Below are positions 2 to 53,484 of a stretch of 64,000 bases of DNA, piece after piece. The stretch is taken from positions 1-64,000 of IMG/VR virus record IMGVR_UViG_3300023199_000204. The stretch is one strand, 5' to 3'. The position numbers and the translations under genes were made by a program. Numbering within the stretch: position 1 is the stretch's first letter; every line of letters starts with the position of its first letter. Below the pieces are notes generated by a model. The model was given only the letters and a program-made list of their open reading frames with translations, had not been told where the DNA came from and did no database searches.

Positions 2-1117
2 CGTGAACTAGTTAAAGAAGCTATGGGCGAAGATATGCTATCATTAGAAGACGATCTTGATTCTGATTTAGGAGATTCCGATTTAGGGGATTCTGATTTA
101 GGGGATTCTGATTTAGGGGATTCTGAAGATTTTGAAGCAGAGCTTGATAAACTAATGTCAGAGGTTAGGGAGTTAAGTGGTGATGTTGATTCATTAGAAG
201 CGGATGTTGATGGAATTAAAGAAATGGAAGAAAAAGAGCCGTGGCATGGAGATCTTCAGGTTGAAGAAGAAGCAAATGATATGTCTCTAGACCAAGAGCT
301 TGCGGCTATGTTAGCTGATGATGGAGACGAAGAAGATAAAGAAGAAGACGAAGAAGATGAGTCAGATGCCAACGATAGTTTAGTTTCTTCTGCTTCAAAG
401 CGTCGTGCTTGGAGAGAAAAAGTAGCGGCAGAATATCAGCTTAAACTAAATCCTCAAACTACTGCTGATACCGATATGCCTCTTGCTCAAAGTGCAAACT
501 TGGGTCAATTATCAACAAGCCCATCTGATGATGGAGCTAAAGTTGAGGGATTGGTGGAGATGCACGAGAAGTTCTTGAGAGAGATTAATAGTCTACCTCA
601 GGTTCGCGAAGCTGTTGAGAAGATTACTTCTTTGATTAAATCTGGAAAACTAAATATTGCTGATCTAGATAATTCTGAAAAACTCAAGGCACTTGCTGTT
701 GATCCAGCTGCTGCGAAATATTACAAAGATTATTTTGGTCAAGCGGATCCGAAAAGCAGTGAGTTTGCCAATGAGCTAGTAAAAGAATTTGGTAAAAAGA
801 AAGTAGAGGCTAGCCTTGATGAGCAGAGACTAAAAATGCGTCGTGCTTATGATGTAGCCATTGATATGCAGGAAAAGGGAATGATTCCTGACACTGTATC
901 TTCTTTACATCAACAAGTTGATGAGCTTATAAATTTTAATGATAGCCAATTTGAAAGTTTCAAAAAAGCTGTTCAACTTGCTGGAAGGCCAACCAAAGTA
1001 GCTACAGCATCTCTAAAGGTTCCAGCAATGGAAGTAGGAATCAATGAGGATGGAGTGGCAAATAACACAACTACAGCTCCTGTTAATCTAGCGGGACAAC
1101 TTAAAAGCCTATGGTAA
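2..1117 (+). CDS. Acidic capsid scaffolding/core-like protein, C-terminal part (frame open to the window edge)
   Basis: Frame is open from position 2. Very D/E-rich coiled-coil character, K-x-A sites, a segment (DGAKVEGLVEMHEK..P) resembling those in the 5559 and 9590 proteins, and a location upstream of the capsid genes. Confidence 0.55.
   Translation, partial: RELVKEAMGEDMLSLEDDLDSDLGDSDLGDSDLGDSDLGDSEDFEAELDKLMSEVRELSGDVDSLEADVDGIKEMEEKEPWHGDLQVEEEANDMSLDQELAAMLADDGDEEDKEEDEEDESDANDSLVSSASKRRAWREKVAAEYQLKLNPQTTADTDMPLAQSANLGQLSTSPSDDGAKVEGLVEMHEKFLREINSLPQVREAVEKITSLIKSGKLNIADLDNSEKLKALAVDPAAAKYYKDYFGQADPKSSEFANELVKEFGKKKVEASLDEQRLKMRRAYDVAIDMQEKGMIPDTVSSLHQQVDELINFNDSQFESFKKAVQLAGRPTKVATASLKVPAMEVGINEDGVANNTTTAPVNLAGQLKSLW
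59..127 (+). repeat. 15-bp coding tandem repeat (GATTCYGATTTAGGR) x4 plus a partial copy, encoding DSDLG
   Basis: Seen directly: units at 59, 74, 89, 104 and a partial unit at 119. Confidence 0.95.
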
Positions 1118-1347: not shown

Positions 1348-1365
1348 TTCTGTGGAGGATTCACA

Positions 1366-1830
1366 ATGACAAGTCTAAAACCACAATATGTGGATGAAAT
1401 CGTAGCTTCTATGGCAGAAATGCTAGGGGACAAGGATTTTATGTCACTTCATAAAAAAGCAGCTTTGGAGAAAGTTGCCAAAAGTACTCAAGAATATCTA
1501 TCAGCATATCAGGCAGCACAATCGCTAAATGAGGTTGAAACAATTCATAATGAGGTTCAGGCAACTAGAGGGTCTAGATCTCAGCAAGAGGAAGAGGCTC
1601 TTCATAATGCTTATCAGAGTGCGAAATCTCGTTTCTCTCCTGGTGAGAAACCAGTTCCTATTATGAGTGATGATGGTCAAGCGGCTGATGACGGAAAAGA
1701 GAATGTAGCAGCTGACTTTGCTCTTAAAAATCTTTCTGAAGTAGCTGACGCACTTGATAGCAACGGTTTTGAACATCTTGCTAATTTTATTGATGAGGCA
1801 ATGACAAAAATAGCTTCAAAAAAAAAATAA
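1366..1830 (+). CDS. Putative internal head protein with LA..LD..G module; possible -1 frameshift extension to 2060
   Basis: GGAGG RBS; motif LSEVADALDSNGFEHLANFIDEAM; ends in an A10 run then TAA, with the -1 frame open to TAA at 2058-2060. Confidence 0.6.
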   Translation: MTSLKPQYVDEIVASMAEMLGDKDFMSLHKKAALEKVAKSTQEYLSAYQAAQSLNEVETIHNEVQATRGSRSQQEEEALHNAYQSAKSRFSPGEKPVPIMSDDGQAADDGKENVAADFALKNLSEVADALDSNGFEHLANFIDEAMTKIASKKK

Positions 1831-2072
1831 CAAAGTCTAAAGATGGCAAGCCTGGAAAATATAAAAACACAGGCGGTGCTCACCCACCACCCAAAAAGTG
1901 GTGGGACAAGATGTCTAAAGAGATTAAAAAAAATAATAAAGATTACTCTAAAGAGAGAATAAGAGAGACCGTGGGTGATATTTGGTATAATAAACTTAGT
2001 AATTCTAAGCGTTCTGAAATATATAAACGTCACGGAAAAAGCAAAAGCCCTAACAGGTAAGGGAGCATAACA

Positions 2073-2591
2073 GTGGTTCTTAAATATAGCGAAAAAAATA
2101 ACAATACTCTTGCTAATGCTATGGCAAGGGCTTTAAATGAAGATTTTGAAAAATTGGCAAAAACCAAATGTAAATGCGGCTGTTTTAACTGCTCTTGCGG
2201 CAAAGCCAAAAATAATGGAAAATGTCCTTGTAATTGTAAATCTTGTAAAAAAACAAAAGTGGCAGAGTTGGAAGATATATCTTATACTATTTTAAGATCA
2301 GCTGACTTATTAGACAAGGTTGGACACTATGATGCTGCTTTAAGTTTATCATATGCTTTAAAGAAATTGGCAGAGAATGGATGTAATTGCCCTGACTGTC
2401 CTGATGAAATTGAGGATATAGACTCAAAAGAAGATTTAGTATATGTAATAAGCAAGGCTTTATTTGATATTTCAGATACTTTAGATAAGCTTGGACACTT
2501 TGATGTTTCAGATAATGTTGATACTGCTCTTAAATCACTATCCGGAAAGAAATGTGATTGCGGGGGATCTTGTTGTAACGGCAACTCTTAA
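2073..2591 (+). CDS. Putative internal head protein with Cys-rich (metallothionein-like) segments and two LA..LD..G modules
   Basis: CxC/CxxC clusters alternate with SADLLDKVGHYDAA and ISDTLDKLGHFDVSDNVD. Confidence 0.55.
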   Translation: MVLKYSEKNNNTLANAMARALNEDFEKLAKTKCKCGCFNCSCGKAKNNGKCPCNCKSCKKTKVAELEDISYTILRSADLLDKVGHYDAALSLSYALKKLAENGCNCPDCPDEIEDIDSKEDLVYVISKALFDISDTLDKLGHFDVSDNVDTALKSLSGKKCDCGGSCCNGNS

Positions 2592-2602: not shown

Positions 2603-3403
2603 ATGTCTAATATTAGCAAGTATATGGAAAATATAAAACTAGATGTTATTAAACTATATACTAAAGATAATTTAAGTTATAATGCTATAGCTAAAAAATT
2701 TAATGTAAGCCAACCCAGTATTAAAAAATATTTAATTAATTGGGGAGTTAAACAAAAACCAGTCTATGAACAAATGAGTTATGTATTACACGATAGACAA
2801 AAAGATGATAGGTGTTTTCCAAAAAATATTCTTAATTTATTAGAAGGTGGTTTGCTTGGTGATGGTGGAGTTTATAATACCAAACTTCAATCTTATTATC
2901 AGCACGGATGTATTAACAAAGATTATATAGATTTTTTAAAAACATATTTTAATAACAATGAAATTATAGCAAACATTTGCTCTATTGCCCCAAAAGGCAA
3001 AAGTGTTAAAAGATTTTATTGTCTAACAACCAGAAGTAGTTTATTTTTAAGGAATATTAGGAATAAGTGGTATAAAGGCAGTATTAAGATAGTTCCAGAA
3101 GATTTTGAATTATGTCCTTTATCATTAAAGCATTGGTGGATAGGTGATGGATATTTAAACCCTGATTGGGGATGGGCTACTATTGCTACGCAAAGTTTTA
3201 CAGAAAAAGAGAATATGTTTTTAAAAAATAAATTAAATAATATTACTGAACATTATATAACCTTACGTCCAAGTGGTAAAGCAGCTCCAGGTAAATTTCA
3301 TCTATATTTATCAAGAAAAGCAATAAATGATCTAATTAATTATATGGGAAGTTGTCCTGTAAAATCGTTTAAATACAAATGGAAGGTTAAAAATGGTATT
3401 TGA
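2603..3403 (+). CDS. LAGLIDADG homing endonuclease (N-terminal HTH plus two LAGLIDADG motifs)
   Basis: GGLLGDGG and HWWIGDGY motifs, ATQSFT..E; AT-rich. Confidence 0.85.
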   Translation: MSNISKYMENIKLDVIKLYTKDNLSYNAIAKKFNVSQPSIKKYLINWGVKQKPVYEQMSYVLHDRQKDDRCFPKNILNLLEGGLLGDGGVYNTKLQSYYQHGCINKDYIDFLKTYFNNNEIIANICSIAPKGKSVKRFYCLTTRSSLFLRNIRNKWYKGSIKIVPEDFELCPLSLKHWWIGDGYLNPDWGWATIATQSFTEKENMFLKNKLNNITEHYITLRPSGKAAPGKFHLYLSRKAINDLINYMGSCPVKSFKYKWKVKNGI

Positions 3404-4088
3404 AATAATACAATCAGGAAATGCTTTACCATTTTTCTATAAACTGGATCCAACTGCTACATTTGAATCAGGGCAAATTGGTCAGCTTAAGCTTATAGGA
3501 AATGATATAGTTGTAGGATTATCTGACGGAACAGCTCCTTTGGGTATTATTGATGATGTAAGAACTACAGCTTTTTCGCAACCTGTTGCCGATGAAGTTG
3601 TAATTATTCAGGGAATAGATATTACTACAGACGGCTATAATACTTACAACGGAAGAGATTCCATAGGTCCACTAGATAATTCCCCAGTTATTGGGTCAAG
3701 CTTTACTTCAGATTATCCAGATGTATCTTTAATCACAACCAATGGAAATTTAATTTTACCAGCCGGGGCAGAGCTTAATTATGATGCCGATGGAGATGGA
3801 ATAAAAGAATCTGTAAGAATGACAGTTAGTTATGTTTATCATGTGGCTGATTTACCTGGTGGAGATACTACATTAGGAAGTGGAAAAGTCACTATTTGGT
3901 TTCAAAGAGGAATTTTTGCTACGGATCAGTATGATACTACTGCCAAATATCCTTTAAACGCAGTATTATTTGTTAATTCTGAAGGAAAGCTTACCACAAG
4001 TCAAACCACTCCTGAACATCCAGGAGTTGCGATGGTTACAGGTCCTCCGGGAGCTACGATAAACACTTTAGAGTTCCTATGGCTATAA
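3393..4088 (+). CDS. Capsid decoration/cement-like protein 1
   Basis: Beta-rich; shares QSGN, SGKVT.W..G and GKLT with the gene directly upstream of the major capsid gene. Confidence 0.55.
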   Translation: MVFEIIQSGNALPFFYKLDPTATFESGQIGQLKLIGNDIVVGLSDGTAPLGIIDDVRTTAFSQPVADEVVIIQGIDITTDGYNTYNGRDSIGPLDNSPVIGSSFTSDYPDVSLITTNGNLILPAGAELNYDADGDGIKESVRMTVSYVYHVADLPGGDTTLGSGKVTIWFQRGIFATDQYDTTAKYPLNAVLFVNSEGKLTTSQTTPEHPGVAMVTGPPGATINTLEFLWL

Positions 4089-5152
4089 ATAATTATTCTT
4101 TAAATGCTAAAAGTCCAAAATGGACTAAAGAAGAAATTGAAAAATTAAAATCTGTTTATAGAGATTACACTTATAAAGATCTAAGTATTATTTTTGATAG
4201 AAGTGTAGAGGCAATTTCACAAAAACTTAGTAGTCTTGGTTATAGTAAATATAATAAATGGACTGAAGAGGAAATAAACTTACTTAAAAAAAAATATAAT
4301 ACAAGTTCTACTGAACAGCTTATAATATTGTTTCCTGCTCATACTTTAGGAAGTATTAATAAAAAGGCAGAAAAATATAATTTAAAACGTCAAAATATAA
4401 AAAGACCAAAATGGACAGATGATGAAATTGGCACCATCCAAATAATGTATGAAAAAGGGTTTTCAGTTTCAGAAATTTCAAAAAAAATTAATAGAAGTGA
4501 AATAGTAGTAAATATTGAAATTGGTTCTTATAAAGCAAAACTTAAGAAATGGACAGCACAAGAAGAAAAAATATTATTAGATAATTATAAAACTTTATCT
4601 TATAAAGAAATTTCAAATCTTCTATCTAACAAAAGTTTAAGTCAAGTTAAAAAGTATGGTAAAAAGCTTAATCTTAACAAAATTGATCCAAGAGGTGTTT
4701 GGACGGCTGAGGAAGAAAAACTTTTAATTGAAAAATATTCTATTTCAACTATAGAAGAGCTTATGAATATTTTTAAAAACAAAGCTAAGTCTCAAATATC
4801 TAAAAAAGCAAAGCATTTGAGATTAAGAAAAACTAAGAAGACATTATCTAGATGTTTTAGAACAAAAATAGATAATTATAATGATATAGTTAAAATTTAC
4901 ACTTCTTCGCGGCAACGTTGGCGTAAAATAGTTTTAAAAAGAGATAATTATACTTGTGTTGATTGTAATTTAAAAGACATTACTGGTTTAATATTACAAA
5001 TTCATCATATTATTCCTGTAAGAAGTTGTAGTAGTAAAGAACAGATTATAGATATTAAAAATGGTATTACTCTGTGTATAGATTGTCATAATAAAGTGAC
5101 AGGTAGAGAGTATAAATTTATAGAAAAGTATCAAAACTTAGTTGAGTTATAA
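4079..5152 (+). CDS. HNH endonuclease with N-terminal W-T-x-E-E (Myb/SANT-like) repeats
   Basis: Five WTxxE repeats; C-terminal RDNYTCVDC..HHIIP..NGITLCIDCH. Confidence 0.85.
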   Translation: MAINNYSLNAKSPKWTKEEIEKLKSVYRDYTYKDLSIIFDRSVEAISQKLSSLGYSKYNKWTEEEINLLKKKYNTSSTEQLIILFPAHTLGSINKKAEKYNLKRQNIKRPKWTDDEIGTIQIMYEKGFSVSEISKKINRSEIVVNIEIGSYKAKLKKWTAQEEKILLDNYKTLSYKEISNLLSNKSLSQVKKYGKKLNLNKIDPRGVWTAEEEKLLIEKYSISTIEELMNIFKNKAKSQISKKAKHLRLRKTKKTLSRCFRTKIDNYNDIVKIYTSSRQRWRKIVLKRDNYTCVDCNLKDITGLILQIHHIIPVRSCSSKEQIIDIKNGITLCIDCHNKVTGREYKFIEKYQNLVEL

Positions 5153-8663: not shown

Positions 8664-9593
8664 ATGATGACACTTTCTCTACGAGAGGAACGACAACTGT
8701 TGCCACTGTTGGTTAAAGAAGCCGCCATACCTGAATTTCTTGGCGGCTTTTTAAAAACAATAAAAGATAAGACATCATTTCTGTCAAAACCTTTTGAGAG
8801 TTTTTTGGGAACAGTTGGAATTATTGTTGTTGGCAGAATAAGCAAAATTCTGGGATTTCTGGCTTTAATTGGCGAATATTACGGCTTTGGATTAAGTTCT
8901 ATTGGAAAAATGATAGATACTTCTTTAGGATTTAATACCGGGAAACCAAAAATATCTTTATCTGATATAAAAAAAACAGCAAAAGGTGTTATTGACACCA
9001 TTGCTAAAAAAATTGGTTTAAAAGAGGCGGAATTTAAAAACGAATATCTTTTATCAAAGCGGGCAGGGCTTGGAACATTTTTGGGACAAATTTTTAGAGC
9101 AAAGAGATTAAGTTTTGTTAGTATTTTATATGGTTTTATAAGAACATTTGTTAAAGGTTTAATTGCTGCTGGGCTTATTGGTGGTTTAGCTTCTATGACT
9201 GGTCAAAGACCAGCGCCTCCAGTGGGCGGGAAGTCAAAAAGTCTTACAGGGAAATTACAATACTATAAAAATGTTTCTAACAATGTTGAAGATACTTTAA
9301 TAAAATTCCTAAACGCAGAAATAGCAAACTTTTCAAGAGCCTTCGAAGCACAAAAGGGGAGACCATTAAAAGGCTCTTCTGAATTACAAAAAGTATTATA
9401 TAATATAGAAATATTAAATTATGGGAAAAATATTTCTGATTTAAATTTAAGAGATGCTTTTATTGGTCCAGATGTTAAAACTTTGGCAAAAAAGATTTTA
9501 CCAAAAGTTAATTATCAGCCTTTAGCTTCTTCTTCTTCTACAAAAAAAACAAAAGAACTTTTAAAACTTTTAAACGAGGTGAAAAAAAAATGA
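8664..9593 (+). CDS. Putative internal/ejection protein with hydrophobic Gly-rich helices
   Basis: KEAA, KEA and KRA sites; hydrophobic segments such as FLGTVGIIVVG..ILGFLALIG and GLIAAGLIGGLA. Confidence 0.5.
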   Translation: MMTLSLREERQLLPLLVKEAAIPEFLGGFLKTIKDKTSFLSKPFESFLGTVGIIVVGRISKILGFLALIGEYYGFGLSSIGKMIDTSLGFNTGKPKISLSDIKKTAKGVIDTIAKKIGLKEAEFKNEYLLSKRAGLGTFLGQIFRAKRLSFVSILYGFIRTFVKGLIAAGLIGGLASMTGQRPAPPVGGKSKSLTGKLQYYKNVSNNVEDTLIKFLNAEIANFSRAFEAQKGRPLKGSSELQKVLYNIEILNYGKNISDLNLRDAFIGPDVKTLAKKILPKVNYQPLASSSSTKKTKELLKLLNEVKKK

Positions 9594-10963
9594 CCGGACA
9601 ATGGCACGGTAGTGATGTTATGGCTGGCTTTGCCAAAATAGCTGCCGAATCTGGGCTCATTACCTCAGATTTTAATCCGGATAATAAAGATTTCCTTGGA
9701 AATCCAAGTGAAAAAACTCCGGTGAAAGATAAAACAAGGTATGAGCCAACAGAAGATTATAATAATAGATATAATAAAGAGGGTGAAAAGCTTATAGATA
9801 AAGCACATCCTAAAAATGTGGAAGTGGCCGACGCGATGGGCAAAGGTGGTCTCGTTGAAAACGAGAACCAGAGGCAAGAAAAAGATATTGAAGTGGCAAC
9901 AAGAATGCCAAGTGGAGCATTATTTGGAATTCACGCAGATTTAATTAATGATTTGGTAAAACTTGCTAACAAGCTAGATGATGTTGGAAATTATAAAGCA
10001 GCAAGTTTAGTTGATAAAACCATTAGGGAGGTTCGCGGTCTCCCTTTTGATAAAGGCCACTCCATACAGAAAGAAGCAGCTCTATTTGGTCTTGTAGCAC
10101 TAGTTGCTGGTTTAGCACTTCCTTGGATTGCGACAAAACTAAAATTTAGATCTCCTTATGCTAGAAAATCAGGATTAACAGGAAAGCTTGGTTGGATAAG
10201 TGCTGGTGTAGGACTACTTAACCTATTTGGATCTAAACTTACAAGTATCAAAGAAAATCTAAATACTGATTTACAAGATTTATATGATGTTTTGGAAAAA
10301 CTAGATACACCCTCTTCAAAAAAAGCTATAATGATATTAAAGCCACATTTAAATAAGTTTTCAAAAATTAATTTAAGCACAAAAGAGGGTGCGGCCCAGT
10401 TTTTAAATAACTTTCATAAACTAAGTCAGGCTTATCCACAGGTAGAGGCATTAATTAATAATATTATTATTGAATATCAAAGTAATTGGTTTGATAAGTT
10501 AAAAGGATATGTTGGAATGGATGTATTATCCAGATTTAAGGAAAAATATTCAGATTTTAAGACAACATATAAAGAGACACAAGCTTTGGTTAATAAAACT
10601 TTAAAGGTCGGTGGAAAATTAAACCGCAAAGCTATCTCTCTAGGGGGAGCAGCTTCTGGGACCAAACCTTTTTCTCCTAAAGTTATAAGTGATAAACCAA
10701 TTTACAGACTACAGAGATTATTATTTGAAAGTGGATTTAGAGGAAAGAAATGGGAAGGAAAAATTAGTGGAGAATTGGATCAGGCTACTGTAACTGCTGC
10801 CAAAGAACTGGAAAGTCTTTTAAACGCAGCAATGTCGAAAATGCTTAAAAAGAATAATAAAGACCCAGATTTTTTCAACAACTCTATTATAAAAGATGGA
10901 AAGTTAGTAGGCAATGTTAATTCTTTATATAAAGTTATTCAAATTGCTGAAAATATATCATAA
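9590..10963 (+). CDS. Putative internal/ejection protein (paralogous segment with 5559; TM-like helices; PG-binding-like C-terminus)
   Basis: GEKLIDKAHP...GGLVE...LVKLANKLDDVGNYKAASLVDKTI; KEAA followed by hydrophobic LFGLVALVAGLALPW. Confidence 0.55.
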   Translation: MTGQWHGSDVMAGFAKIAAESGLITSDFNPDNKDFLGNPSEKTPVKDKTRYEPTEDYNNRYNKEGEKLIDKAHPKNVEVADAMGKGGLVENENQRQEKDIEVATRMPSGALFGIHADLINDLVKLANKLDDVGNYKAASLVDKTIREVRGLPFDKGHSIQKEAALFGLVALVAGLALPWIATKLKFRSPYARKSGLTGKLGWISAGVGLLNLFGSKLTSIKENLNTDLQDLYDVLEKLDTPSSKKAIMILKPHLNKFSKINLSTKEGAAQFLNNFHKLSQAYPQVEALINNIIIEYQSNWFDKLKGYVGMDVLSRFKEKYSDFKTTYKETQALVNKTLKVGGKLNRKAISLGGAASGTKPFSPKVISDKPIYRLQRLLFESGFRGKKWEGKISGELDQATVTAAKELESLLNAAMSKMLKKNNKDPDFFNNSIIKDGKLVGNVNSLYKVIQIAENIS

Positions 10964-11790: not shown

Positions 11791-12822
11791 ATGTCTTTAT
11801 TTAGTACACATGGAAAGGGAGGCGAGCTTAATGTTGGTTCAACTCGCGATGCCCTTCAACAAATTGTAAAATATGCAACTATTTTAGAAGATTTGCAGCC
11901 AGCAAATACTGCTTTGGCTCAGAGACCCTCATTTTCTGATCAACAGAGAGATGAGCTAGTAAAAAGAGCACTTTTAACCACAGAGGGCAAAATTGCTTTA
12001 GGTCAGGCAATGGCTAACCCCATTAGAAAGAACCTTGATTATCAAGGGGTAGGAAGAAGAGTTCTTGTTGTAGACCCGTTACCACAGGGAGCACTCCCAG
12101 TTTACGAGCGTGACATTGATGTTGCTGCTACTGTTGTTTCAAGCAATGGTTCAGCACCTGAGAGTCGCGTATTCGGTGACAGGGTAACTATTCCTGAGTT
12201 TGAAGTTGTTTCAAACCCGACAGTAAGAATTGCTGAAGTTCGCAGACGTAGATTCAACGTCATTGACCGTGCCCAGCAGAAAGCTCGCCAAGAAATCCAG
12301 GCTCAAGAGGATGCCAACATCTTCTCAGCTCTTGATTTCGCAGCTGACTCAACTCTTGGTGGTGAAAACACTGCTCAGGACATTGCGGACGCTGGTCTTC
12401 TAAAGCGCGACCTTTCTGAAATTAAGGTTCAGGTTGATCGTTGGGACCTTGTAACCACAAAATTCCTTATGAATATCGTTGAATACAATGATATCCTAAA
12501 CTGGGCAACTGGTGGCGGACAAGGAACTGGTGGTGGCGAGGTTGATCCTGTCACTATGCGTGAAATCCTACAGACTGGTCTTTATGCCCATCTTTGGGGT
12601 GCTGACATCATCGTTTCAAAGGTTGTTCCTCAGGGAACTGTCTTCGGTGTTGCCGATCCTGAGTTTATTGGTGTAATGCCTGTAAGACAGGATATTGAAG
12701 TACTTCCTGCAGACGAGCCTAAACAGTTAAAACTTGGCTGGGTAGTAAACGAAATTATTGGTGTTGGCATTGTCAACTCCCGTGGTTGTGCTGTTGGTCG
12801 TAAATCAGTAGCTGTTGGCTAA
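11791..12822 (+). CDS. Major capsid protein (HK97-like fold)
   Basis: 343 aa; PIRKNLDYQGVGRR.LVVDPLPQG.LP.Y, A.QEIQAQED..IF, G.YAHLWGADIIVS..VP.G and LGWVVNE.IG motifs typical of large-phage capsid proteins; strongly biased codons; followed by a terminator. Confidence 0.85.
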   Translation: MSLFSTHGKGGELNVGSTRDALQQIVKYATILEDLQPANTALAQRPSFSDQQRDELVKRALLTTEGKIALGQAMANPIRKNLDYQGVGRRVLVVDPLPQGALPVYERDIDVAATVVSSNGSAPESRVFGDRVTIPEFEVVSNPTVRIAEVRRRRFNVIDRAQQKARQEIQAQEDANIFSALDFAADSTLGGENTAQDIADAGLLKRDLSEIKVQVDRWDLVTTKFLMNIVEYNDILNWATGGGQGTGGGEVDPVTMREILQTGLYAHLWGADIIVSKVVPQGTVFGVADPEFIGVMPVRQDIEVLPADEPKQLKLGWVVNEIIGVGIVNSRGCAVGRKSVAVG

Positions 12823-12848: not shown

Positions 12849-12884
12849 GATAAAGGGGCTTTGTTCCCCTTTATCTTTTTTTTT
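12849..12884 (+). terminator. Rho-independent terminator after the major capsid gene
   Basis: GATAAAGGGG / CCCCTTTATC stem followed by T9. Confidence 0.9.
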
Positions 12885-12930
12885 GTCGATAAGAGCGACC
12901 CACACCAAATATAACTCGTTAGGAGGTTGG

Positions 12931-13899
12931 GTGATGGGGAAAAGATTATTTACGAAAAGGGAATTATTAAGAAAATTGGTGGAATTTTCTAAAAAGGTAA
13001 ATAAGAGTAGAATTTCAAAAACCGATTTAGACAAAGATAAAGCATTTCCATCTTCGGCAACATATAAGAGATATTTTGGTAGTTGGAGCAATGCTTTAAA
13101 GTTAGCTAAATTAAAATCTGGAATAATTACTGGAAGACCACAGGATAAGGAGATAATAATTCCAGACAAAGCGTTAGATATAATAAATGGAGAATTATTA
13201 GGTGATGGCTCAATGCCTTTAGGCGGGGAATATAAAAGCAATGCTTATTTTGAGCATTCAACAGCGAATATAGATTATGGAAAATATTTATATAATAAGC
13301 TTAAAAATTATGTTCCATTATTAAATTCCTCATATTGCCCTAAAAGAAATAAGAGATGTAATATTCAATTTAGAACAAGAAGTAGGGTTAATATTGCTTG
13401 GACTAAAATTAGAAACAAATGGTATATTAATGGAAAAAAAATAATACCAAATGATTTAATTCTCACAAAAGAGGTTTGTCTTCATTGGTATTTAGGTGAC
13501 GGATACAGTGAGGATAAGACTTGTAAATTTTCTACTTGTGGATTTACTAAAAAAGAGAACGAAAAATTATGCGAACTATTGTTAAACATTGGCTTTAAAT
13601 CAAACATTAATAAAAGAAGCGGTGGTTATTATATTATAAGAATGAGAAGAAGCAGTTCATTTAAATTTTTAGATTGGTTAGGTCCTTGTCCAGCGAAAGG
13701 ATATGAGCATAGATGGAATATTGGAGAAAAATCCAAGTTATTAACTAAAAAAGATTTAGAAACAGCATTTAAGAAATTTAATAAATCGGTTACAAGAAAA
13801 GAGTTTGATGCTGATAAAGATGTTCCTTCGTCTATAACAGCTATTAGATTATTTGGAAGTTGGAATAAGGCAAAGGAATTTTATTATGAAAATAAGTGA
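12931..13899 (+). CDS. LAGLIDADG endonuclease flanked by homing-endonuclease-associated (PS...FGSW) repeats
   Basis: GELLGDGS and HWYLGDGY motifs; PSSATYKRYFGSW and PSSITAIRLFGSW repeats; AGGAGG RBS before GTG/ATG at 12931/12934. Confidence 0.8.
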   Translation: MMGKRLFTKRELLRKLVEFSKKVNKSRISKTDLDKDKAFPSSATYKRYFGSWSNALKLAKLKSGIITGRPQDKEIIIPDKALDIINGELLGDGSMPLGGEYKSNAYFEHSTANIDYGKYLYNKLKNYVPLLNSSYCPKRNKRCNIQFRTRSRVNIAWTKIRNKWYINGKKIIPNDLILTKEVCLHWYLGDGYSEDKTCKFSTCGFTKKENEKLCELLLNIGFKSNINKRSGGYYIIRMRRSSSFKFLDWLGPCPAKGYEHRWNIGEKSKLLTKKDLETAFKKFNKSVTRKEFDADKDVPSSITAIRLFGSWNKAKEFYYENK

Positions 13900-15837: not shown

Positions 15838-18351
15838 GTGAGAAAAAAAACAACGGCTGAGTTTATAAGCGATGCGATAAAAGTTCATAAAGGTAAATAT
15901 GATTATAGTAAAACAAATTATATTTCATGTAAAAATAAAGTGGAAATAATTTGCTCTATTCACGGAGAGTTTTTTCAAACAGCGAGCGACCATCTATCAG
16001 GGCATGGTTGTAAAAAATGTAAATTCGATAAATTAAATAAATTAAGAAAGGTAAATTTAAAAGAATTTCTTGAAAGAGCAAGAAAATCTCATAACAATTT
16101 TTATGATTATTCTCTAATAGAGAAAATATATGATTGTAATAATGATAAGTTAAAAATTATATGTCCCATACACAGAATATTTTATCAAACGGCATCTTCA
16201 CATATGTCAGGAATAGGATGTAAAGAATGCTATTATGATAATGTTAGAAAAAATCCTCCAAATCCTACTATTACTTTTGATGAATTTTTAGAAAGAGCAA
16301 AAAAGATATTTAGAAATAAATATAAGTATAAAAACTATGAAAATATTTCTTCAAAAATAACAATAATTTGTCCTATACATGGAGAATATGAGCAATTACC
16401 ATATAGTCATTTAAAAAGTAAAGGATGTGTTAAATGTAGAGGAACTGTAAATAATCTTAAAGTATTTATTAGCAAGGCAAATAATATACATAATTTTAGA
16501 TATGATTATAGCAAATCAGCTTATTCTGGAAATGAAGAGTTAATAACAATAATTTGCCCTATACATGGTGAATTTGAACAGATAGCGAGAACTCATTTAA
16601 GTGGCTCAGGATGTAGATTTTGTTATGGAAAACGTAAAAAAACTACTAAAAAATTTATAAAAGAAGTAATGGAAGTTCATGGGAACAAATATGATTACAG
16701 TAAAGTAGATTATCAAAATTGGAAAACAAAAGTTAAAATAATATGCCCTACTCACGGAGAATTTTTCCAAAGGGCTCGACTTCATCTAAAAGGAGCTAAT
16801 TGTCCCAGATGTGCTAATTCTTTTAGAAAGACTACCAAAGAGTTTGTTAAAGAAGTAATGGAAGTTCATGGAAATACATATAATTATAGTAAAACAAAAT
16901 ATATAAATTCTTATACTAAAATAATAATTATATGTTCTACTCACGGAGAATTTAAACAGAACCCAAGAGTTCATTTAAGGGGATCAGGTTGTAGAATTTG
17001 TAATTTATTTAAGGTTTCTAAAATATCTCAAGATTGGCTTGATAATTTCAAAGGAATAGAAAAAGAGGTTCCTATTACCGTTGGTAAAAATAGATTTATA
17101 GTTGATGGATTTAATAAAAATACAAATACTATATATGAGTTTGATGGAGACTTTTGGCATGGAAATCCAGATGTTTTTAACCTTAATGATAAAAATAAAA
17201 CTGCCAAAATGACTTTTAAAAAGCTTAATGAAAAGACATTAAGAAAAAGAAATGTCTTAATTAATGCTGGTTATAATCTTTTATATATATGGGAAAATGA
17301 TTGGAATAAAATTAAAGGAAGTAAAATGGAAAAATATAATAACGCAATTGAAGTGGATGGAAATAAATTAACAAAAAAATATATAGAGAGTTTAGATGAC
17401 AAACAAAGAGAAAAATTAATAGCCCCTATTTTTCATTATTTTAGAATTAATGGCTTTCAATATCCCGATGATGAGAATAAAATAAAAAAAGATTATAAAA
17501 GGCTTAAAGAAAAAGAATTTGATAAAAATATTACTGAATTATATAATAACGCAAGTTTAGCTACTTATATTTGTAAATATTTTTGTAAAAGTTTTTATAA
17601 AACTACAAGTAGAGGAAAACCACATATGATTGATGTTTTTAATGATGATAAATTATTAAGAAAAGTTATTAAAAATAGATTGGGTTTAAATTGGTATAAA
17701 CAAAAAGGAGAAGATGATGTAGAGGCTTTTACGATTTCATTTAAGCAAATAATCCAAGGAATTCGTTCTAGTAGGCTAGTTCCTATGATTTCTATGTTTA
17801 AGCCTAGCATCGCAAAGTTCATATATCAAAAATATAGTAATTATGGAGATACTATTCTAGATTACTCTGCTGGTTTTGGCGGAAGAATGCTTGGTGCTTC
17901 TGTTTTAGATAGAAGATATATCGGAATAGATCCACTAACTTCTTTTGAAATTAATGATATTATCAAATATCTTCAAATTGAAAACTGTTATTTAATAAAA
18001 GGCATTTCTGAAGAAATATATTTAAAGCATAATTCCATAGATCTATCTTTTTCAAGCCCTCCTTACTATGATCTTGAATATTATTCTAACGATAATACTC
18101 AGGCATATAATAAAGGTGAGAATTATTTTTATAATGTATATTGGAGAAAAACATTAGAAAACTCCTATAAAATGCTTAAAAAGGGAAAAATTTTCGCTGT
18201 AAATGTAAAAGACCAGCCAAAAATGGTTGAAATGGCTGGTGATTTTTTCACATATAAGGAAAAAATTGGCTTGAGAACCATAAGATCTCATCTGAACAAA
18301 AAAAATATAGATCCTACCAAATATGAATATATCTACATATTCGAAAAATAA
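15838..18351 (+). CDS. Fusion of DUF723-like repeats and a Vsr/DUF559-like nuclease with an amino (N4C/N6A) DNA methyltransferase
   Basis: Six YDYS..ICPxHGEF.Q...H..G.GC repeats; YEFDGDFWHG and IWENDW; then ILDYSAGFGGR (motif I) and SPPYY (motif IV). Internal AAGGA RBS plus in-frame ATG at 17326. Confidence 0.8.
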   Translation: MRKKTTAEFISDAIKVHKGKYDYSKTNYISCKNKVEIICSIHGEFFQTASDHLSGHGCKKCKFDKLNKLRKVNLKEFLERARKSHNNFYDYSLIEKIYDCNNDKLKIICPIHRIFYQTASSHMSGIGCKECYYDNVRKNPPNPTITFDEFLERAKKIFRNKYKYKNYENISSKITIICPIHGEYEQLPYSHLKSKGCVKCRGTVNNLKVFISKANNIHNFRYDYSKSAYSGNEELITIICPIHGEFEQIARTHLSGSGCRFCYGKRKKTTKKFIKEVMEVHGNKYDYSKVDYQNWKTKVKIICPTHGEFFQRARLHLKGANCPRCANSFRKTTKEFVKEVMEVHGNTYNYSKTKYINSYTKIIIICSTHGEFKQNPRVHLRGSGCRICNLFKVSKISQDWLDNFKGIEKEVPITVGKNRFIVDGFNKNTNTIYEFDGDFWHGNPDVFNLNDKNKTAKMTFKKLNEKTLRKRNVLINAGYNLLYIWENDWNKIKGSKMEKYNNAIEVDGNKLTKKYIESLDDKQREKLIAPIFHYFRINGFQYPDDENKIKKDYKRLKEKEFDKNITELYNNASLATYICKYFCKSFYKTTSRGKPHMIDVFNDDKLLRKVIKNRLGLNWYKQKGEDDVEAFTISFKQIIQGIRSSRLVPMISMFKPSIAKFIYQKYSNYGDTILDYSAGFGGRMLGASVLDRRYIGIDPLTSFEINDIIKYLQIENCYLIKGISEEIYLKHNSIDLSFSSPPYYDLEYYSNDNTQAYNKGENYFYNVYWRKTLENSYKMLKKGKIFAVNVKDQPKMVEMAGDFFTYKEKIGLRTIRSHLNKKNIDPTKYEYIYIFEK

Positions 18352-23089: not shown

Positions 23090-24421
23090 GTGAAAAAGAA
23101 ATATTTGAGCGAATATGATAAAATAAATTGTTGGGATTATGATAAAAACAAAAATTTAGATCCTAGTAAATTAACTTACGGGAGCCATAAGTTAGCGTGG
23201 TGGAAATGTAATAAATGTGACCAATCTTATAAAAAATCTATTAAAGAACAATTAAAACACAAATTATGTCCGTTTTGTTCTAATAAAAAAGTATATGAAG
23301 GCAATTGCCTTTTAAATTTATATCCAGAAATATCAAAAGAGTGGGATTATAATAAAAATGATTTAAAACCAAATAATGTAGTTTCTGGAAGTAATAGAAA
23401 AGTATGGTGGAAGTGTAGTAAATGTAATCAAGAGTGGGAAGCACCTATTTTTAAAAGAACTCTTTATAATTATGGATGCCCATACTGTTCAAATAGAAAA
23501 GTCTCTAAAAAAAATTGCTTATCTAGCACTAACCCAGAATTATTAAAAGAGTGGTGGTATGAAAAAAATATTATTAAGCCACATAATATAACAGCAGGCA
23601 GTGGAAAAAAAGTTTGGTGGAAGTGCTTAAATTGTAAAGAAAAATATAAAATAATTATACATAGAAAAGTAAGCGGAAGAGGTTGCCCATATTGCATAAA
23701 TATAAAAATTTCTAAAAAAAATTGTTTATCAGCAACACATCCCGAAATAGCAAGTGAATGGAATTATGATAAAAACCGTTTAACACCAGATGATGTAGTT
23801 TCAGGAAGCAACAAAAAAGTATGGTGGAAATGTAATAAGTGTAATCAAGAATGGAGCACTAAAATTCAACATAGGACATTATCTAACAGCAACTGTCCTT
23901 TTTGTAGCAACCAGAAAGTATATAATGGAAACTGTTTAGAGACTTTATATCCTGATGTAGCAAAAGAATGGAATTATAATAAAAATGATTTAACACCAAA
24001 AGATGTAGTTTATGGTAGCAATAAGAAAGTATGGTGGATATGTAAAAATAGCCACGAATGGAAAACTGATGTCTATAGTAGAACTATTAGCAAAACATTA
24101 TGTAAAAAATGTAGTAATAATGTTTCAAAGACATCTCAAAAATGGTTAAATAAAATGGAAGAAATATATGGAAAAATTGAAAGAGAATTTCCTATAAAAA
24201 CAAAAAAAAGAGTTTATAATGTTGATGGGTTTTCAAAAAAGCATAATATAATATTTTCTTACCACGGAAATTATTGGCACGGAAACCCAGAAATATATGA
24301 TTTAAATGAGTATAATAATGTAGCTAAAAAGACTTTTAGAGAGTTATATTTAGATACTTTAATTAGAGCACAATATTTAAAAGCTGAAGGGTATTGTGTT
24401 ATTGAAAAATGGGGTAAATAA
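23090..24421 (+). CDS. Zinc-ribbon-repeat (DUF4379-like) protein with a Vsr-like nuclease C-terminus
   Basis: Five EW.Y.KN..GS.KKVWWKC..C..CPxC repeats; VDGF..YHGNYWHGNP. Confidence 0.8.
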   Translation: MKKKYLSEYDKINCWDYDKNKNLDPSKLTYGSHKLAWWKCNKCDQSYKKSIKEQLKHKLCPFCSNKKVYEGNCLLNLYPEISKEWDYNKNDLKPNNVVSGSNRKVWWKCSKCNQEWEAPIFKRTLYNYGCPYCSNRKVSKKNCLSSTNPELLKEWWYEKNIIKPHNITAGSGKKVWWKCLNCKEKYKIIIHRKVSGRGCPYCINIKISKKNCLSATHPEIASEWNYDKNRLTPDDVVSGSNKKVWWKCNKCNQEWSTKIQHRTLSNSNCPFCSNQKVYNGNCLETLYPDVAKEWNYNKNDLTPKDVVYGSNKKVWWICKNSHEWKTDVYSRTISKTLCKKCSNNVSKTSQKWLNKMEEIYGKIEREFPIKTKKRVYNVDGFSKKHNIIFSYHGNYWHGNPEIYDLNEYNNVAKKTFRELYLDTLIRAQYLKAEGYCVIEKWGK

Positions 24422-28172: not shown

Positions 28173-29324
28173 ATGTCAACACTTAAACTAACAATTACTG
28201 TATCAGATATAAGTGATGTAATTTCTTTATATGATAAGATACAAATTCAAAGGTCTGAATCGGGCCCACCATATTCAGATGCTGTTGATATAACATCTTC
28301 TGCTTCTACTTCCGCAACTCTTTCCAGTGAGTTAAATGGCCCATATAATATAAACGGGCAAACTTTATCTTTTAAAATAAATGGAGGCAACACTCAAACT
28401 TTAACCTTTACTTCATCAAACCCTGTTTCATCTACAGCGGCTGCTTCTGAATTTACGACATTTGCCTCTGGAGCCACAGCTTCTGGAGCACTTGGAAACT
28501 TTATTATGACAACTGCTTTGACTGGAACTGGTTCTTCTATAGAAGTAATAGGAGGAACTGCTTTAACTGAATTAGGATTTGATGCCGGAGATAAAGATAC
28601 GGGTGAAAACTCTGAAATAACTTTAGTTGCGAACACTTCAACTTATGAGTTCACTGACAGCAGTGGAAGTGAAAATTACTATTATAGAACAAGATACTAC
28701 AACTCTTCAACAGATGCTGTTAGCTGTTATTCTGATTGGATTCAAGGTGCTGACATAAGTGCTGATTTAGAAATTGGTGACGCTCCAATATACGCCTGGA
28801 CTCAAGATGAAATATGTGGAATTAATATATTGCTGAAACAGTTAAAAGCCAGACTAAAAAGTGATGGATTGGCAGAAACTATTGATGAGTATGGAAACAT
28901 AGAATTATCAAATTGTCCAATATTTACAGATGATGAATTAGTATGTTTCTTACAAAACAGTTTAAGTGAGTTTAATCAAACGCCACATTTTACTAGTTTT
29001 ACGTTTGCGGACCAGGTTATTTATGACAGATATGCTCATATTATTGTAGAAGGTGCTTTTATATTAGCAACAGGGGCACAAATGTTAATTGAAGCGGGAA
29101 GAGAGTTTACAATTACAGATAATGGAATTACTATGAATCCGCCACCATTATCTAATGTTCTAAATAATCAACTTGGACATTTTGTTACAAGGCACACACA
29201 AGCTTTAGAAAAGATTAAATGGAGTATTAAACCAAAACCAACGGGATTTGGAAGCTTCAGGGTACTTGCTTCAAATCCAAATTATCTTCGTCTACGGCAC
29301 CTAAGGCAAAGGAGAATTATATAG
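28173..29324 (+). CDS. Neck/head-tail adaptor protein with N-terminal Ig-like extension
   Basis: C-terminal FTDDEL..FL..SLSEFN.TP..IIVEGA..LIEAGREF.ITDNGI helical connector-like domain; synteny. Confidence 0.55.
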   Translation: MSTLKLTITVSDISDVISLYDKIQIQRSESGPPYSDAVDITSSASTSATLSSELNGPYNINGQTLSFKINGGNTQTLTFTSSNPVSSTAAASEFTTFASGATASGALGNFIMTTALTGTGSSIEVIGGTALTELGFDAGDKDTGENSEITLVANTSTYEFTDSSGSENYYYRTRYYNSSTDAVSCYSDWIQGADISADLEIGDAPIYAWTQDEICGINILLKQLKARLKSDGLAETIDEYGNIELSNCPIFTDDELVCFLQNSLSEFNQTPHFTSFTFADQVIYDRYAHIIVEGAFILATGAQMLIEAGREFTITDNGITMNPPPLSNVLNNQLGHFVTRHTQALEKIKWSIKPKPTGFGSFRVLASNPNYLRLRHLRQRRII

Positions 29325-53000: not shown

Positions 53001-53459
53001 GTGATTATGACAGAGATTAAACATAGCACTTTTGGCTCCTCAAAGGGTCATTCCAAAGAAAAGCAAAATCCTCAACAGCAAATAAAAGAAGCTGATCTGG
53101 GCTCATTAATTGAACTTGGATGTATTAAAGAGGATGTTGTGATTGGAAACCTTAGTTTTAAAATGAGAAGCTTAAGTTCTACAGAAAGACTAATGGCCGC
53201 TGATTATATTGATGAATATGCGGACGTGGAGAAACTATTTAGTTTTAATAAAATGATTTTATCAATGGCAATTGACAGTGTAAATGGAACCCCTTTGGAA
53301 AACTTTTACGATGGTCCAGATAATTTAGATGTTTTAAGCAAAAGAATGGAGGTAATGGGGAAATTACAGTCTCCAGTTATAGCTGTTCTTTTAGAGGCAT
53401 ATGATAAAATTACTGACAGATGTGATGCTCAATTTAATGTTGAACAAGTAAAAAAATAG
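53001..53459 (+). CDS. Tail assembly chaperone (gpG-like)
   Basis: Lies between tube and tape measure; ends in slippery A AAA AAA TAG. Confidence 0.75.
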   Translation: MIMTEIKHSTFGSSKGHSKEKQNPQQQIKEADLGSLIELGCIKEDVVIGNLSFKMRSLSSTERLMAADYIDEYADVEKLFSFNKMILSMAIDSVNGTPLENFYDGPDNLDVLSKRMEVMGKLQSPVIAVLLEAYDKITDRCDAQFNVEQVKK

Positions 53460-53484
53460 CAACTGGGTCGTGGCATCGGCTCAG
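53450..53484 (+). other. Programmed -1 ribosomal frameshift signal
   Basis: A AAA AAA (53450-53456); stem CTGGGTCG / CGGCTCAG (53463-53484, two G.U pairs) 6 nt downstream. Confidence 0.8.

What the first reader, a model, noticed from the sequence alone, without database searches (positions are those of the whole stretch)
1797..2060. Second candidate programmed -1 frameshift, in a head gene
The 1366 ORF ends TCA AAA AAA AAA TAA (A10 at 1818-1827), the same architecture as the tail chaperone site (A AAA AAA TAG). The -1 frame is open from 1797 to TAA 2060, fills the gap before the next RBS exactly, and reads like a real basic domain (KKITKSKDGKPGKYKNTGGAHPPPKKWWDKMSKEIKKNNKDYSKERIRETVGDIWYNKLSNSKRSEIYKRHGKSKSPNR). 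Its only ATG (~1911) has no RBS. The direction is opposite to the +1 lesions seen elsewhere. It may produce a short and a long, possibly DNA-binding, form of an internal head protein.
Basis: partly seen in the sequence, partly recalled or inferred. Interest (0 to 1): 0.6.

Follow-up and report, generated by a model that had tools for sequence, protein, structure and literature searches.

The report
Poly-A slippage site joining two head-module ORFs
In this jumbo phage, a head-module gene is split by a run of ten A's, and slippage on that run most likely makes both a short protein and a longer one that carries an HMG-box-like DNA-binding domain; several distant relatives have the same split, so it is a real but familiar kind of recoding site.

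Summary
ORF 1366-1830 ends TCA AAA AAA AAA TAA, with A10 at 1818-1827. The -1 frame is open from 1797 to 2060, and its only ATG is at 1911.

The two ORFs are one gene. The conceptual -1 fusion (231 aa) aligns end to end with continuous single-ORF homologues, and the similarity starts right at the A run.

It is unlikely to be a sequencing error:
- At least four assemblies carry A10.
- Other A10 and A11 runs in the genome sit in frame.
- Six diverged lineages have the same domain junction broken at an A9-A10 run: four more at -1 and two at +1.
- ORF2 is under strong purifying selection (pN 0.10-0.17 against pS about 0.83), including residues upstream of the ATG.

The mechanism is not settled. 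I slightly favour RNA-polymerase stuttering on the run over a classical ribosomal -1 shift. The runs are always 9 or more A's, both shift directions occur, and no stimulator is conserved. No raw reads or RNA data were available.

Verdict: a real recoding site and a new member of a known kind. The phage HMG-box-like family is the more novel by-product.

The parts
1353..1357 (+). GGAGG ribosome-binding site of ORF1, 8 nt before ATG 1366
   Evidence: sequence
1366..1830 (+). ORF1, 154 aa, acidic (pI 4.9), helical. Conserved MTSLK N-terminus and a C-terminal '..VADALDxxGFxxxAxxIDEAxxKIA' helix pair. This is the short product.
   Evidence: AF2 model of homologue P0019
1818..1827 (+). A10 slippage tract. 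Zero frame reads tcA AAA AAA AAA; it contains A_AAA_AAA heptamers.
   Evidence: equivalent A9-A10 tracts in L009, L014, L016, L022, L039, L040
1828..1830 (+). Zero-frame TAA directly after the tract; it ends the short form.
   Evidence: the same in L009, L014 and L040
1827..2060 (+). ORF2 in the -1 frame (77 codons plus TAA 2058-2060), basic (pI 10.2): a linker followed by an HMG-box-like domain. Read only after a -1 change of frame, which gives the 231-aa long product.
1884..2030 (+). HMG-box-like three-helix core (PPKKWWDKM ... VGDIWYNKL ... EIYK)
   Evidence: profile vs PDB sequences; Pfam HMG_box weak hits in 33 of 46 members; AF2 pLDDT 91.8; structure searches
1911..1913 (+). The only ATG of the -1 frame. 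It is the conserved Met inside helix 1 (WWDKM), not a plausible start.
   Evidence: invariant Trp upstream of it
1845..1905 (+). Two predicted RNA hairpins, 17 and 55 nt after the tract. The second is formed by the Pro-Pro/Trp-Trp codons. Probably incidental; the spacing is not conserved in relatives.
2059..2075 (+). AGGGAG site and GTG start (2073) of the next gene, which bounds the element
   Evidence: the next gene is syntenic in L005

Best explanation
ORF1 (1366-1830) and the -1 ORF (1827-2060) are one head-module gene interrupted at a conserved A10 tract. Ordinary expression stops at the TAA after the tract and gives an acidic, helical 154-aa protein. In a minority of expression events the frame changes on the tract, and a 231-aa protein is made that carries a basic HMG-box-like DNA-binding domain at its C-terminus. 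I think the main route is stuttering of RNA polymerase on the run, which gives some mRNAs with A11. A ribosomal -1 slip on A_AAA_AAA next to the stop probably contributes. Shown here: the tract, the two frames, full-length homology of the fusion, recurrence of the interrupted junction, purifying selection on ORF2, and the HMG-like fold. Inferred: that slippage occurs at all, its rate, which machine slips, and the role in the head. My odds: about 0.75-0.8 that functional recoding of some kind happens here, and 0.45 that transcription is the main route.
For: One gene: the -1 fusion aligns end to end with continuous proteins P0019 (228 aa), P0051, P0046, P0027, P0093, P0069 and L030. The linker similarity begins at the tract.
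Not an error: A10 is present in at least 4 assemblies. Other A10 and A11 runs in the same genome lie in frame inside long ORFs.
Recurrence at the same domain junction: L009 TCA AAA AAA AAG TAA (-1); L014 GCA A..A TAA (A10, -1); L040-44 GTA AAA AAA AAG TAA (-1; five assemblies from at least 3 samples); L039, a 312-kb syntenic jumbo relative (A10, -1); L016 (A10, +1); L022 (A9, +1).
ORF2 is translated: for window vs L009, pS is 0.84 and pN 0.17; for L014 vs L040, pS is 0.83 and pN 0.10. There is no start codon before the conserved PPKKWW motif in the four -1 lineages listed (window, L009, L014, and L003-type aside).
The interrupted state needs at least 4 changes on the tree and is interleaved with continuous forms.
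Both architectures exist naturally: many homologues end after the helical domain and lack the HMG box.
Favouring transcription: every interrupted junction has 9 or more A's, although 7 would be enough for a ribosomal shift. Both -1 and +1 solutions occur within one clade around the continuous P0022. No SD-like or structured stimulator sits at a conserved spacing. The close precedent is C. rodentium tssM1, with A11 followed by a stop, mRNAs carrying 10-15 A's, and both forms required (PMC4256274).
Long A runs are depleted in this genome's ORFs (A>=10: 6 observed vs 20.0 +/- 3.4 after synonymous shuffling), so slippery runs appear to carry a cost here, and this one is kept at a domain boundary.
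Against: There are no RNA data, raw reads or protein data, so slippage itself is unobserved.
Long runs are also mutational hot spots, so 'A>=9 goes with interrupted' is expected from mutation bias alone.
Features that fit a ribosomal shift: five of seven lineages need -1; three of these place A_AAA_AAG, the most shift-prone heptamer in E. coli (PMC5009743), in the zero-frame phase; four have a stop codon directly after the tract.
One continuous homologue (L047) carries an in-frame A10 in its linker.
A10 is at the lower end for efficient polymerase slippage, and the polymerase that transcribes late genes of this phage is unknown.
The tree rests on about 54 columns and is poorly resolved.
Confidence: 0.45

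Rival explanations
1. Classical programmed -1 ribosomal frameshift. Lys-tRNAs re-pair one base back on A_AAA_AAA (A_AAA_AAG in relatives) while the zero-frame TAA waits in or next to the A site. RNA polymerase copies the run faithfully.
For: The slippery heptamer is in phase, and the stop follows the tract directly in the window, L009, L014 and L040. A_AAA_AAG is in zero-frame phase in L009, L040 and L039, about 0.04 by chance if the three are independent. The same genome has an A AAA AAA TAG site with an open -1 ORF just before a 694-aa gene, the usual place of the tail-chaperone shift. A_AAA_AAG is the dnaX site and is highly shift-prone in E. coli.
Against: No stimulatory structure lies at 5-9 nt and no upstream SD-like element at the dnaX distance. 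The only shared hairpin comes from the PP/WW codons, 12-56 nt away. L016 and L022 need +1 or -2. Tracts are never 7-8 A's. The RTAA after the run also occurs in frame in a continuous relative (L052), so the adjacent stop may simply be inherited sequence.
Confidence: 0.3
2. No programmed recoding. The tract is a replication-slippage hot spot, and phage populations mix A10 and A11 genomes (phase-variation-like). The long protein comes only from in-frame genomes, or the interrupted state is a tolerated lesion with only incidental rescue.
For: Interrupted, continuous, -1 and +1 states alternate among close relatives. Long runs mutate fast. A different, apparently accidental frameshift sits inside the HMG domain of P0160. 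Many homologues lack the HMG domain, so it may be dispensable.
Against: The consensus allele is the interrupted one in every assembly of two different phages. Pairs that share the interrupted state are saturated at synonymous sites, yet they keep ORF2 intact with pN 0.10-0.17. That is hard to reconcile with an untranslated or rarely translated ORF.
Confidence: 0.13
3. Assembly or sequencing error: the true run is A11 and the gene is a plain continuous ORF.
For: Homopolymers are the classic site of indel errors. Only contigs, not reads, could be inspected. X1 may be the source sample, and X2 belongs to the same study.
Against: The same length appears in the 316-kb record, a JGI contig and two Logan runs. 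In-frame A10 and A11 runs occur elsewhere in the genome. The same junction is interrupted in six other lineages from unrelated samples, with both signs.
Confidence: 0.04
4. ORF2 is a separate small gene, started at ATG 1911 or at a non-canonical codon by termination-reinitiation after the TAA.
For: Gene callers annotate a 49-aa protein from ATG 1911 (P0005). GGUGGG lies 6-11 nt upstream of it. Free-standing proteins with this domain do exist (L017, L027, L033-L037).
Against: The Met is the conserved internal residue of WWDKM in all family members. The invariant Trp, the conserved Pro and the start of helix 1 lie upstream of it, and so does the linker homology back to the tract. There is no ATG, GTG or TTG between the upstream stop and PPKKWW in the window, L009 or L014. 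The free-standing homologues start with an ATG well before the PPKKWW motif.
Confidence: 0.04

Closest known systems
Citrobacter rodentium tssM1 / Yersinia pseudotuberculosis tssM (PMC4256274)
   Same: A poly-A run directly precedes the stop of a truncated ORF. The missing C-terminal domain lies in another frame, and orthologues are continuous. Slippage yields a short and a full-length form.
   Different: There the run is A11, the gene is bacterial (T6SS), and transcriptional slippage and the need for both forms were shown experimentally. Here the run is A10, the gene is a phage head-module gene, and nothing has been measured.
dnaX tau/gamma: E. coli A_AAA_AAG ribosomal -1 shift, and Thermus thermophilus A9 transcriptional slippage (Atkins et al. 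2016, PMC5009743)
   Same: The same slippery sequences. Homologous genes reach two products by either mechanism.
   Different: In dnaX the shifted product is the shorter one. E. coli dnaX has an upstream SD-like element and a downstream stem-loop, and no equivalents are seen here.
Frameshift-added C-terminal domains on phage structural proteins: T7/T3 gene 10A/10B, Lactobacillus phage A2, Listeria phages A118/A500/PSA, Ig-like domains (PMC5009743)
   Same: A fraction of a virion-module protein receives an extra C-terminal domain by recoding. Relatives are indifferent to -1 vs +1, or encode the domain in frame.
   Different: Those are major capsid or tail proteins with surface (often Ig-like) domains and short slippery sites. 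Here the carrier is a small helical protein of unknown role, the added domain is HMG-box-like, and the site is a long homopolymer.
Lambda G/GT-type tail assembly chaperone frameshift
   Same: A slippery run near the end of a small ORF with a -1 extension. A candidate of this type exists in the same window (53450-53459).
   Different: The position is different: the head module, 10 kb upstream of the major capsid gene, not in front of the tape measure. There is no sequence relation, and the tract is A10 rather than a heptamer.
Eukaryotic HMG-box domains (BAF57 7cyu, HMGB3 2yqi, SSRP1 6l34, Abf2p 5jgh)
   Same: The same three-helix arrangement and the same sequence signature: basic N-terminal strand with Pro, NP-D/G turn, G-x-x-W in helix 2. 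Profile E = 9e-5, and Z up to 6.1 over 53-54 residues.
   Different: Helix 1 is shorter. No member tested reaches more than a weak Pfam HMG_box score (best E 7e-6). The domain is found in tailed-phage proteins, and DNA binding is untested.

Membership tests
Programmed -1 ribosomal frameshift site | Slippery heptamer X_XXY_YYZ in the zero-frame phase | tested here: met
   A_AAA_AAA at 1821-1827 before TAA; A_AAA_AAG in L009, L040 and L039
Programmed -1 ribosomal frameshift site | The -1 ORF is coding and is joined functionally to ORF0 | tested here: met
   Full-length alignment of the fusion to continuous homologues; pN much lower than pS in ORF2
Programmed -1 ribosomal frameshift site | Stimulator: structure 5-9 nt downstream and/or an SD-like element upstream | tested here: not met
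   Folds of seven lineages show no element at a shared spacing. The window's hairpins start 17 and 55 nt after the tract. The nearest GAGG is 22 nt upstream. An adjacent stop codon is present in 4 of 5 -1 lineages.
Programmed -1 ribosomal frameshift site | Transframe product made from an unedited mRNA | not testable with these tools
   No RNA or protein data
Programmed transcriptional slippage | Homopolymer about as long as the RNA-DNA hybrid (9 or more A/T) | tested here: met
   A10 in the window; A9-A10 in all six other interrupted lineages. Continuous relatives have 8 A's or fewer at the junction, except L047.
Programmed transcriptional slippage | mRNA population with a heterogeneous run length that is absent from the DNA | not testable with these tools
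   Only DNA contigs were available
HMG-box superfamily | L-shaped three-helix fold of about 70 residues | tested here: met
   AF2 pLDDT 91.8 with three helices. The top 14 rows of an exhaustive structure search are all HMG boxes, Z 4.8-6.1 over 53-54 aa. Foldseek TM 0.60-0.65, rmsd 1.2-1.6 A over 46-47 aa, but E > 0.8.
HMG-box superfamily | Significant sequence-profile match to HMG boxes | tested here: inconclusive
   The family profile hits 9 HMG boxes among the top 10 PDB sequences, best E 9.3e-5. Pfam HMG_box is hit weakly by 33 of 46 members, best E 7.2e-6. The window's own copy gives no hit.
HMG-box superfamily | Binds or bends DNA through the minor groove | not testable with these tools
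   Only inferred from the fold and from the basic charge (pI 10.2)
Tail assembly chaperone G/GT | Gene pair immediately upstream of the tape-measure gene | tested here: not met
   The gene lies 10 kb upstream of the major head protein gene (11791-12822). Its neighbours are a protease-containing giant protein and head-module genes.
Head scaffold / internal head protein | Encoded between the prohead protease and the major capsid gene; helical; homology to known scaffold or internal proteins | tested here: inconclusive
   Position fits: the upstream 1373-aa protein has a head-maturation-protease segment; L008 places the homologue directly after a trypsin-like protease; the predicted structure is all helical. 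No PHROG, Pfam or structural match to any scaffold or internal protein was found.

The most novel reading that the evidence does not exclude
Tailed phages carry a large, undescribed family of HMG-box-like DNA-binding modules (more than 330 clusters at 50% identity). In several lineages of large AT-rich phages the module is attached to a head-module protein only conditionally, through a poly-A 'rheostat'. This arrangement has arisen or been kept at least four times, works in either frame direction, and sets the ratio of DNA-binding to non-binding copies of a protein packaged with, or acting on, the genome.
Probability: 0.3. Interest if true: 0.7.

Novelty: new member of a known kind. Interest (0 to 1): 0.55.

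Why it matters
For annotation: the 154-aa and 49-aa gene calls found in public collections for this phage and its relatives should be merged into one recoded gene. The same A9-A10 junction can be used to find further cases.

For recoding biology: the family is a natural series in which continuous, -1 and +1 versions of one domain junction coexist among relatives. This is good material for testing whether polymerase or ribosome slippage is used in phages that may carry their own RNA polymerases.

For phage biology: an HMG-box-like domain, a fold usually associated with eukaryotic chromatin and mitochondrial DNA packaging, is fused to head-module, Dps/ferritin-like and many other phage proteins. 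This points to an unexplored class of phage DNA-architectural proteins.

Tried and rejected
- PHROGs and Pfam on ORF1, ORF2 and their neighbours gave no usable family for either ORF.
- blastn of 1100-2700 against 50,697 phage records: no match.
- The search for related loci with ORF1 alone: no relatives in IMG/VR.
- Reads: the single run search returned three DNA runs kept only as contigs, and no RNA. A10/A11 read counts and transcript editing could not be examined.
- Two pattern scans of IMG/VR for A9 runs upstream of PKKWW codons returned only the L014 and L016 contigs and two chance hits, L048 and L049. This gave no unbiased sample of in-frame tracts.
- A scan for other tract-length alleles of this phage: none.
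- Foldseek with the full-length homologue model: nothing significant.
- ESM Atlas look-up for ORF1: nothing above noise.
- A conserved downstream frameshift stimulator was looked for and not found.
- The adjacent TAA as proof of a 'shifty stop' was rejected as decisive. An immediate stop would be favoured under any mechanism, and the RTAA motif occurs in frame in a continuous relative.
- 'Run of 9 or more goes with interrupted' as proof of transcriptional slippage was rejected as decisive, because mutation bias predicts the same pattern.
- Literature searches for HMG boxes in tailed phages found nothing. This shows only that the held library has no such paper.

Full report
**Where the window lies.** The window is the first 64 kb of a 316,473-base linear virus record with 32% GC. 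All long ORFs are on the + strand. The major head protein gene is at 11791-12822 (phrog_2522, E 5e-76). The 5'-open ORF at 2-1117 is the end of a 1373-aa protein that carries a head-maturation-protease-like segment (L011). The finding therefore lies in the head module of a jumbo phage, among several homing-endonuclease genes.

**The observation.** ORF 1366-1830 (154 aa) ends TCA AAA AAA AAA TAA, and the run is A10 at 1818-1827. The -1 frame is open from 1797 to 2060. Its first ATG, GTG or TTG is ATG 1911. The next gene starts at GTG 2073, after AGGGAG.

An open -1 frame of this length is not special in itself. In this genome 26% of long ORFs have one, because genes overlap. Only three ORFs have 7 or more A's directly before their stop: this one; 8664-9593, where the next gene's ATG overlaps the stop; and 53001-53459, the tail-chaperone-like site.

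**The two ORFs are one gene.**
- ORF1 homologues P0002, P0003 and P0004 run past the '...MTKIA.KK' point as single ORFs into variable basic tails. P0002 ends KTKSPSK, much like the end of the window's -1 ORF.
- The -1 ORF has relatives at 51-80% identity.
- A profile search of 1.84 billion representatives found 331 clusters with this domain.
- Six of these clusters also match ORF1 over its full length. The conceptual -1 fusion (231 aa) aligns with them from the MTSLK start to the ...KSPNK end. The linker similarity (K.K..GK.EKPPKGAEHKAPKEWWDKM against KITKSKDGKPGKYKNTGGAHPPPKKWWDKM) begins at the A run. A GC-rich full-length continuous homologue is L030.

**Error or real?**
- The same A10 is present in the 316-kb record, a JGI contig (L011), a Logan contig (L010 = run X1) and contigs of a second run, X2, without gaps. 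X1 may be the source sample, and X2 comes from the same study.
- No raw reads or RNA runs were available.
- The assembly is not generally broken at homopolymers. Of the 117 runs of 8 or more A's, most lie in frame inside long ORFs, including one A11 and several A10.

**Recurrence in relatives.** The junction between the helical domain and the WWDK domain is interrupted at a poly-A run in six other lineages.

| Lineage | Sequence at the junction | Frame of ORF2 |
|---|---|---|
| L009 | TCA AAA AAA AAG TAA | -1 |
| L014 | GCA + A run + TAA (A10) | -1 |
| L040-L044 (five assemblies, at least three samples) | GTA AAA AAA AAG TAA | -1 |
| L039 (312,596-base syntenic jumbo relative) | CAA AAA AAA AAG AGA... 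(A10) | -1 |
| L016 = L025 | TCA + A10 + GAA TAA | +1 |
| L022 | GCA AAA AAA AAG TCA... (A9) | +1 |

- Continuous relatives have 8 A's or fewer at the junction: L008, L024, L030, L045, L052 and L053. The exception is L047, which has an in-frame A10 in a long Lys-rich linker.
- By nearest neighbour and on a poorly resolved tree of 54 columns, interrupted and continuous forms are interleaved. The interrupted state needs four changes on the best tree, and well-supported branches force at least two.

**ORF2 is translated in the interrupted lineages.**
- Pairs that share the interrupted state are saturated at synonymous sites but conserved at replacement sites. For window vs L009, pS is 0.84 and pN 0.17. 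For L014 vs L040, pS is 0.83 and pN 0.10.
- The conserved PPKKWW residues, including the family's invariant Trp, lie upstream of the only ATG. No canonical start precedes them in the window, L009 or L014.
- I therefore infer that ORF2 is reached from ORF1.

**Both architectures are natural.** Many homologues of both ORF1 types end after the helical domain and have no HMG domain, while others carry it in frame. A gene that makes both forms is biologically reasonable.

**What ORF2 encodes.**
- Pfam and PHROGs give nothing for the window's own copy.
- A profile of 46 family members hits HMG boxes in nine of the ten best PDB sequences. The best are BAF57 at E 9.3e-5 and HMGB3 at E 0.0017.
- Pfam HMG_box is weakly matched by 33 of the 46 members.
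- AlphaFold2 on the window's 63 residues, using that alignment, gives pLDDT 91.8 and three helices.
- In an exhaustive structure comparison the top 14 rows are all HMG boxes, with Z 4.8-6.1 over 53-54 residues.
- Foldseek agrees on the fold but with weak E-values.
- The long form changes from pI 4.9 to 9.2.
Binding itself is untested.
- A model of the full-length homologue is all helical, with modules joined by disordered linkers, and has no significant match.

**Mechanism.** This is not settled.

For a ribosomal -1 shift:
- The heptamer is in phase.
- A_AAA_AAG is in zero-frame phase in three relatives.
- A stop follows the run directly in four of the five -1 lineages.
- An A7+TAG site sits at the usual tail-chaperone position in the same window.
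- Published work shows that A_AAA_AAG is very shift-prone in E. coli (PMC5009743).

For transcriptional slippage:
- Runs are always 9-10 A's, never 7-8.
- Both -1 and +1 solutions occur in the clade around the continuous P0022.
- No stimulator sits at a conserved spacing. The only shared hairpin is made by the Pro-Pro/Trp-Trp codons, 12-56 nt from the run.
- The close precedent is C. rodentium tssM1: A11 followed by a stop, mRNAs with 10-15 A's, and both forms needed (PMC4256274).

Other points:
- Ribosome sliding on poly-A is a third route, but it was weak below A11 in vitro (PMC4363877).
- Several of the arguments above cut both ways. An immediate stop is useful under any mechanism, and long runs are also where interrupting mutations arise.
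- Long A runs are depleted in this genome's ORFs relative to synonymous shuffles. Runs of 9 or more: 22 observed vs 47.3. Runs of 10 or more: 6 observed vs 20.0 +/- 3.4. None of 200 shuffles was as low. So slippery runs are costly here, and this one is kept at a domain boundary.

My odds are:
- transcription as the main route, 0.45;
- the ribosome as the main route, 0.30;
- DNA-level polymorphism or a tolerated lesion, 0.13;
- assembly error, 0.04;
- independent initiation of ORF2, 0.04.

**Comparison and novelty.** Recoding that adds a C-terminal domain to a share of a phage structural-module protein is well known (T7/T3 gene 10, phage A2, Listeria phages), and relatives can be indifferent to -1, +1 or in-frame encoding. 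Poly-A plus stop giving two forms is known from tssM. This locus is therefore a new member of a known kind.

The less expected result is the domain. It is a large HMG-box-like family in tailed-phage proteins, found at N-termini, at C-termini or alone. I found no paper on it in the held library. That is an absence of evidence only.

**Limits.** There is no read-level, RNA or protein evidence. L009 is cut at its 5' end, so its ORF1 type is unknown. The role in the head rests on gene position alone.

Noticed in passing
window 1884-2030; proteins P0008-P0156; loci L012-L038: The WWDK domain is a divergent HMG-box-like module present in at least 331 protein clusters (50% identity level). It occurs at N-termini (L012, L015, L018, L020), at C-termini, alone (L017, L027, L033-L037), and in proteins of up to 2173 aa. 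It is fused to Dps/ferritin-like domains in one subfamily (L040, P0022). It is not captured by Pfam or PHROGs for the window's own copy.
   Followed up: partly
window 53001-53905: ORF 53001-53459 ends A AAA AAA TAG (53450-53459), and the -1 frame stays open for 149 codons, up to just before the 694-aa gene at 53913. This is the expected place of a tail-assembly-chaperone frameshift. Neither part has a PHROG match.
   Followed up: partly
window 9577-9593: ORF 8664-9593 ends GAGGTG AAA AAA AAA TGA (A9 at 9582-9590), and the next gene (9590-10963) is in the -1 frame. An ordinary ATGA overlap with a GAGG site explains it, but the architecture would also allow a 309+457-aa fusion.
   Followed up: no
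whole genome G000 (316,473 b): Long A runs are strongly depleted inside ORFs relative to synonymous-codon shuffles (A>=9: 22 vs 47; A>=10: 6 vs 20), although 77% of Lys codons are AAA.
   Followed up: yes
L003 2974-3110 (= L004, L026): In GC-rich viral contigs the HMG-like domain opens a roughly 600-aa ORF, but the conserved residues lie before the first ATG, GTG or TTG (GTG 3109). The frame opens right after a TAG overlapping an AGGAG. This suggests a non-canonical start (ATC 2989?) or another kind of recoding. The relatives L028 and L029 have a GTG start.
   Followed up: no
protein P0160 (1.3-kb Logan contig): A continuous Dps-helical-HMG homologue goes out of frame inside the HMG domain, at the A-rich KMKK region. 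It looks like an accidental homopolymer error or mutation, and it is a reminder that such lesions do occur in these collections.
   Followed up: no
L013 2953-3582: In one 206-kb viral contig the domain order is reversed: the HMG-like domain comes first and the 'LYKVAYxLD...ADxFD' helical repeats come after it, in one ORF.
   Followed up: no
window 2-1117 (L011 86-4207): The upstream giant protein (1373 aa) combines a head-maturation-protease-like segment (aa 124-223) with a very acidic region that contains tandem DSDLG repeats (window about 60-125).
   Followed up: partly
window 2603-3403, 4079-5152, 12883-13899, 15838-18351, 23090-24421, 29324-30439: The structural module holds an unusually dense set of LAGLIDADG and HNH homing-endonuclease genes. 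One of them is absent from the syntenic relatives L005 and L006.
   Followed up: no
window 2073-2591: The next gene encodes a 172-aa protein with three Cys-rich clusters (CKCGCFNCSCG..., CNCPDCP, CDCGGSCCNG). It is conserved in synteny (L005) and has no family match.
   Followed up: no
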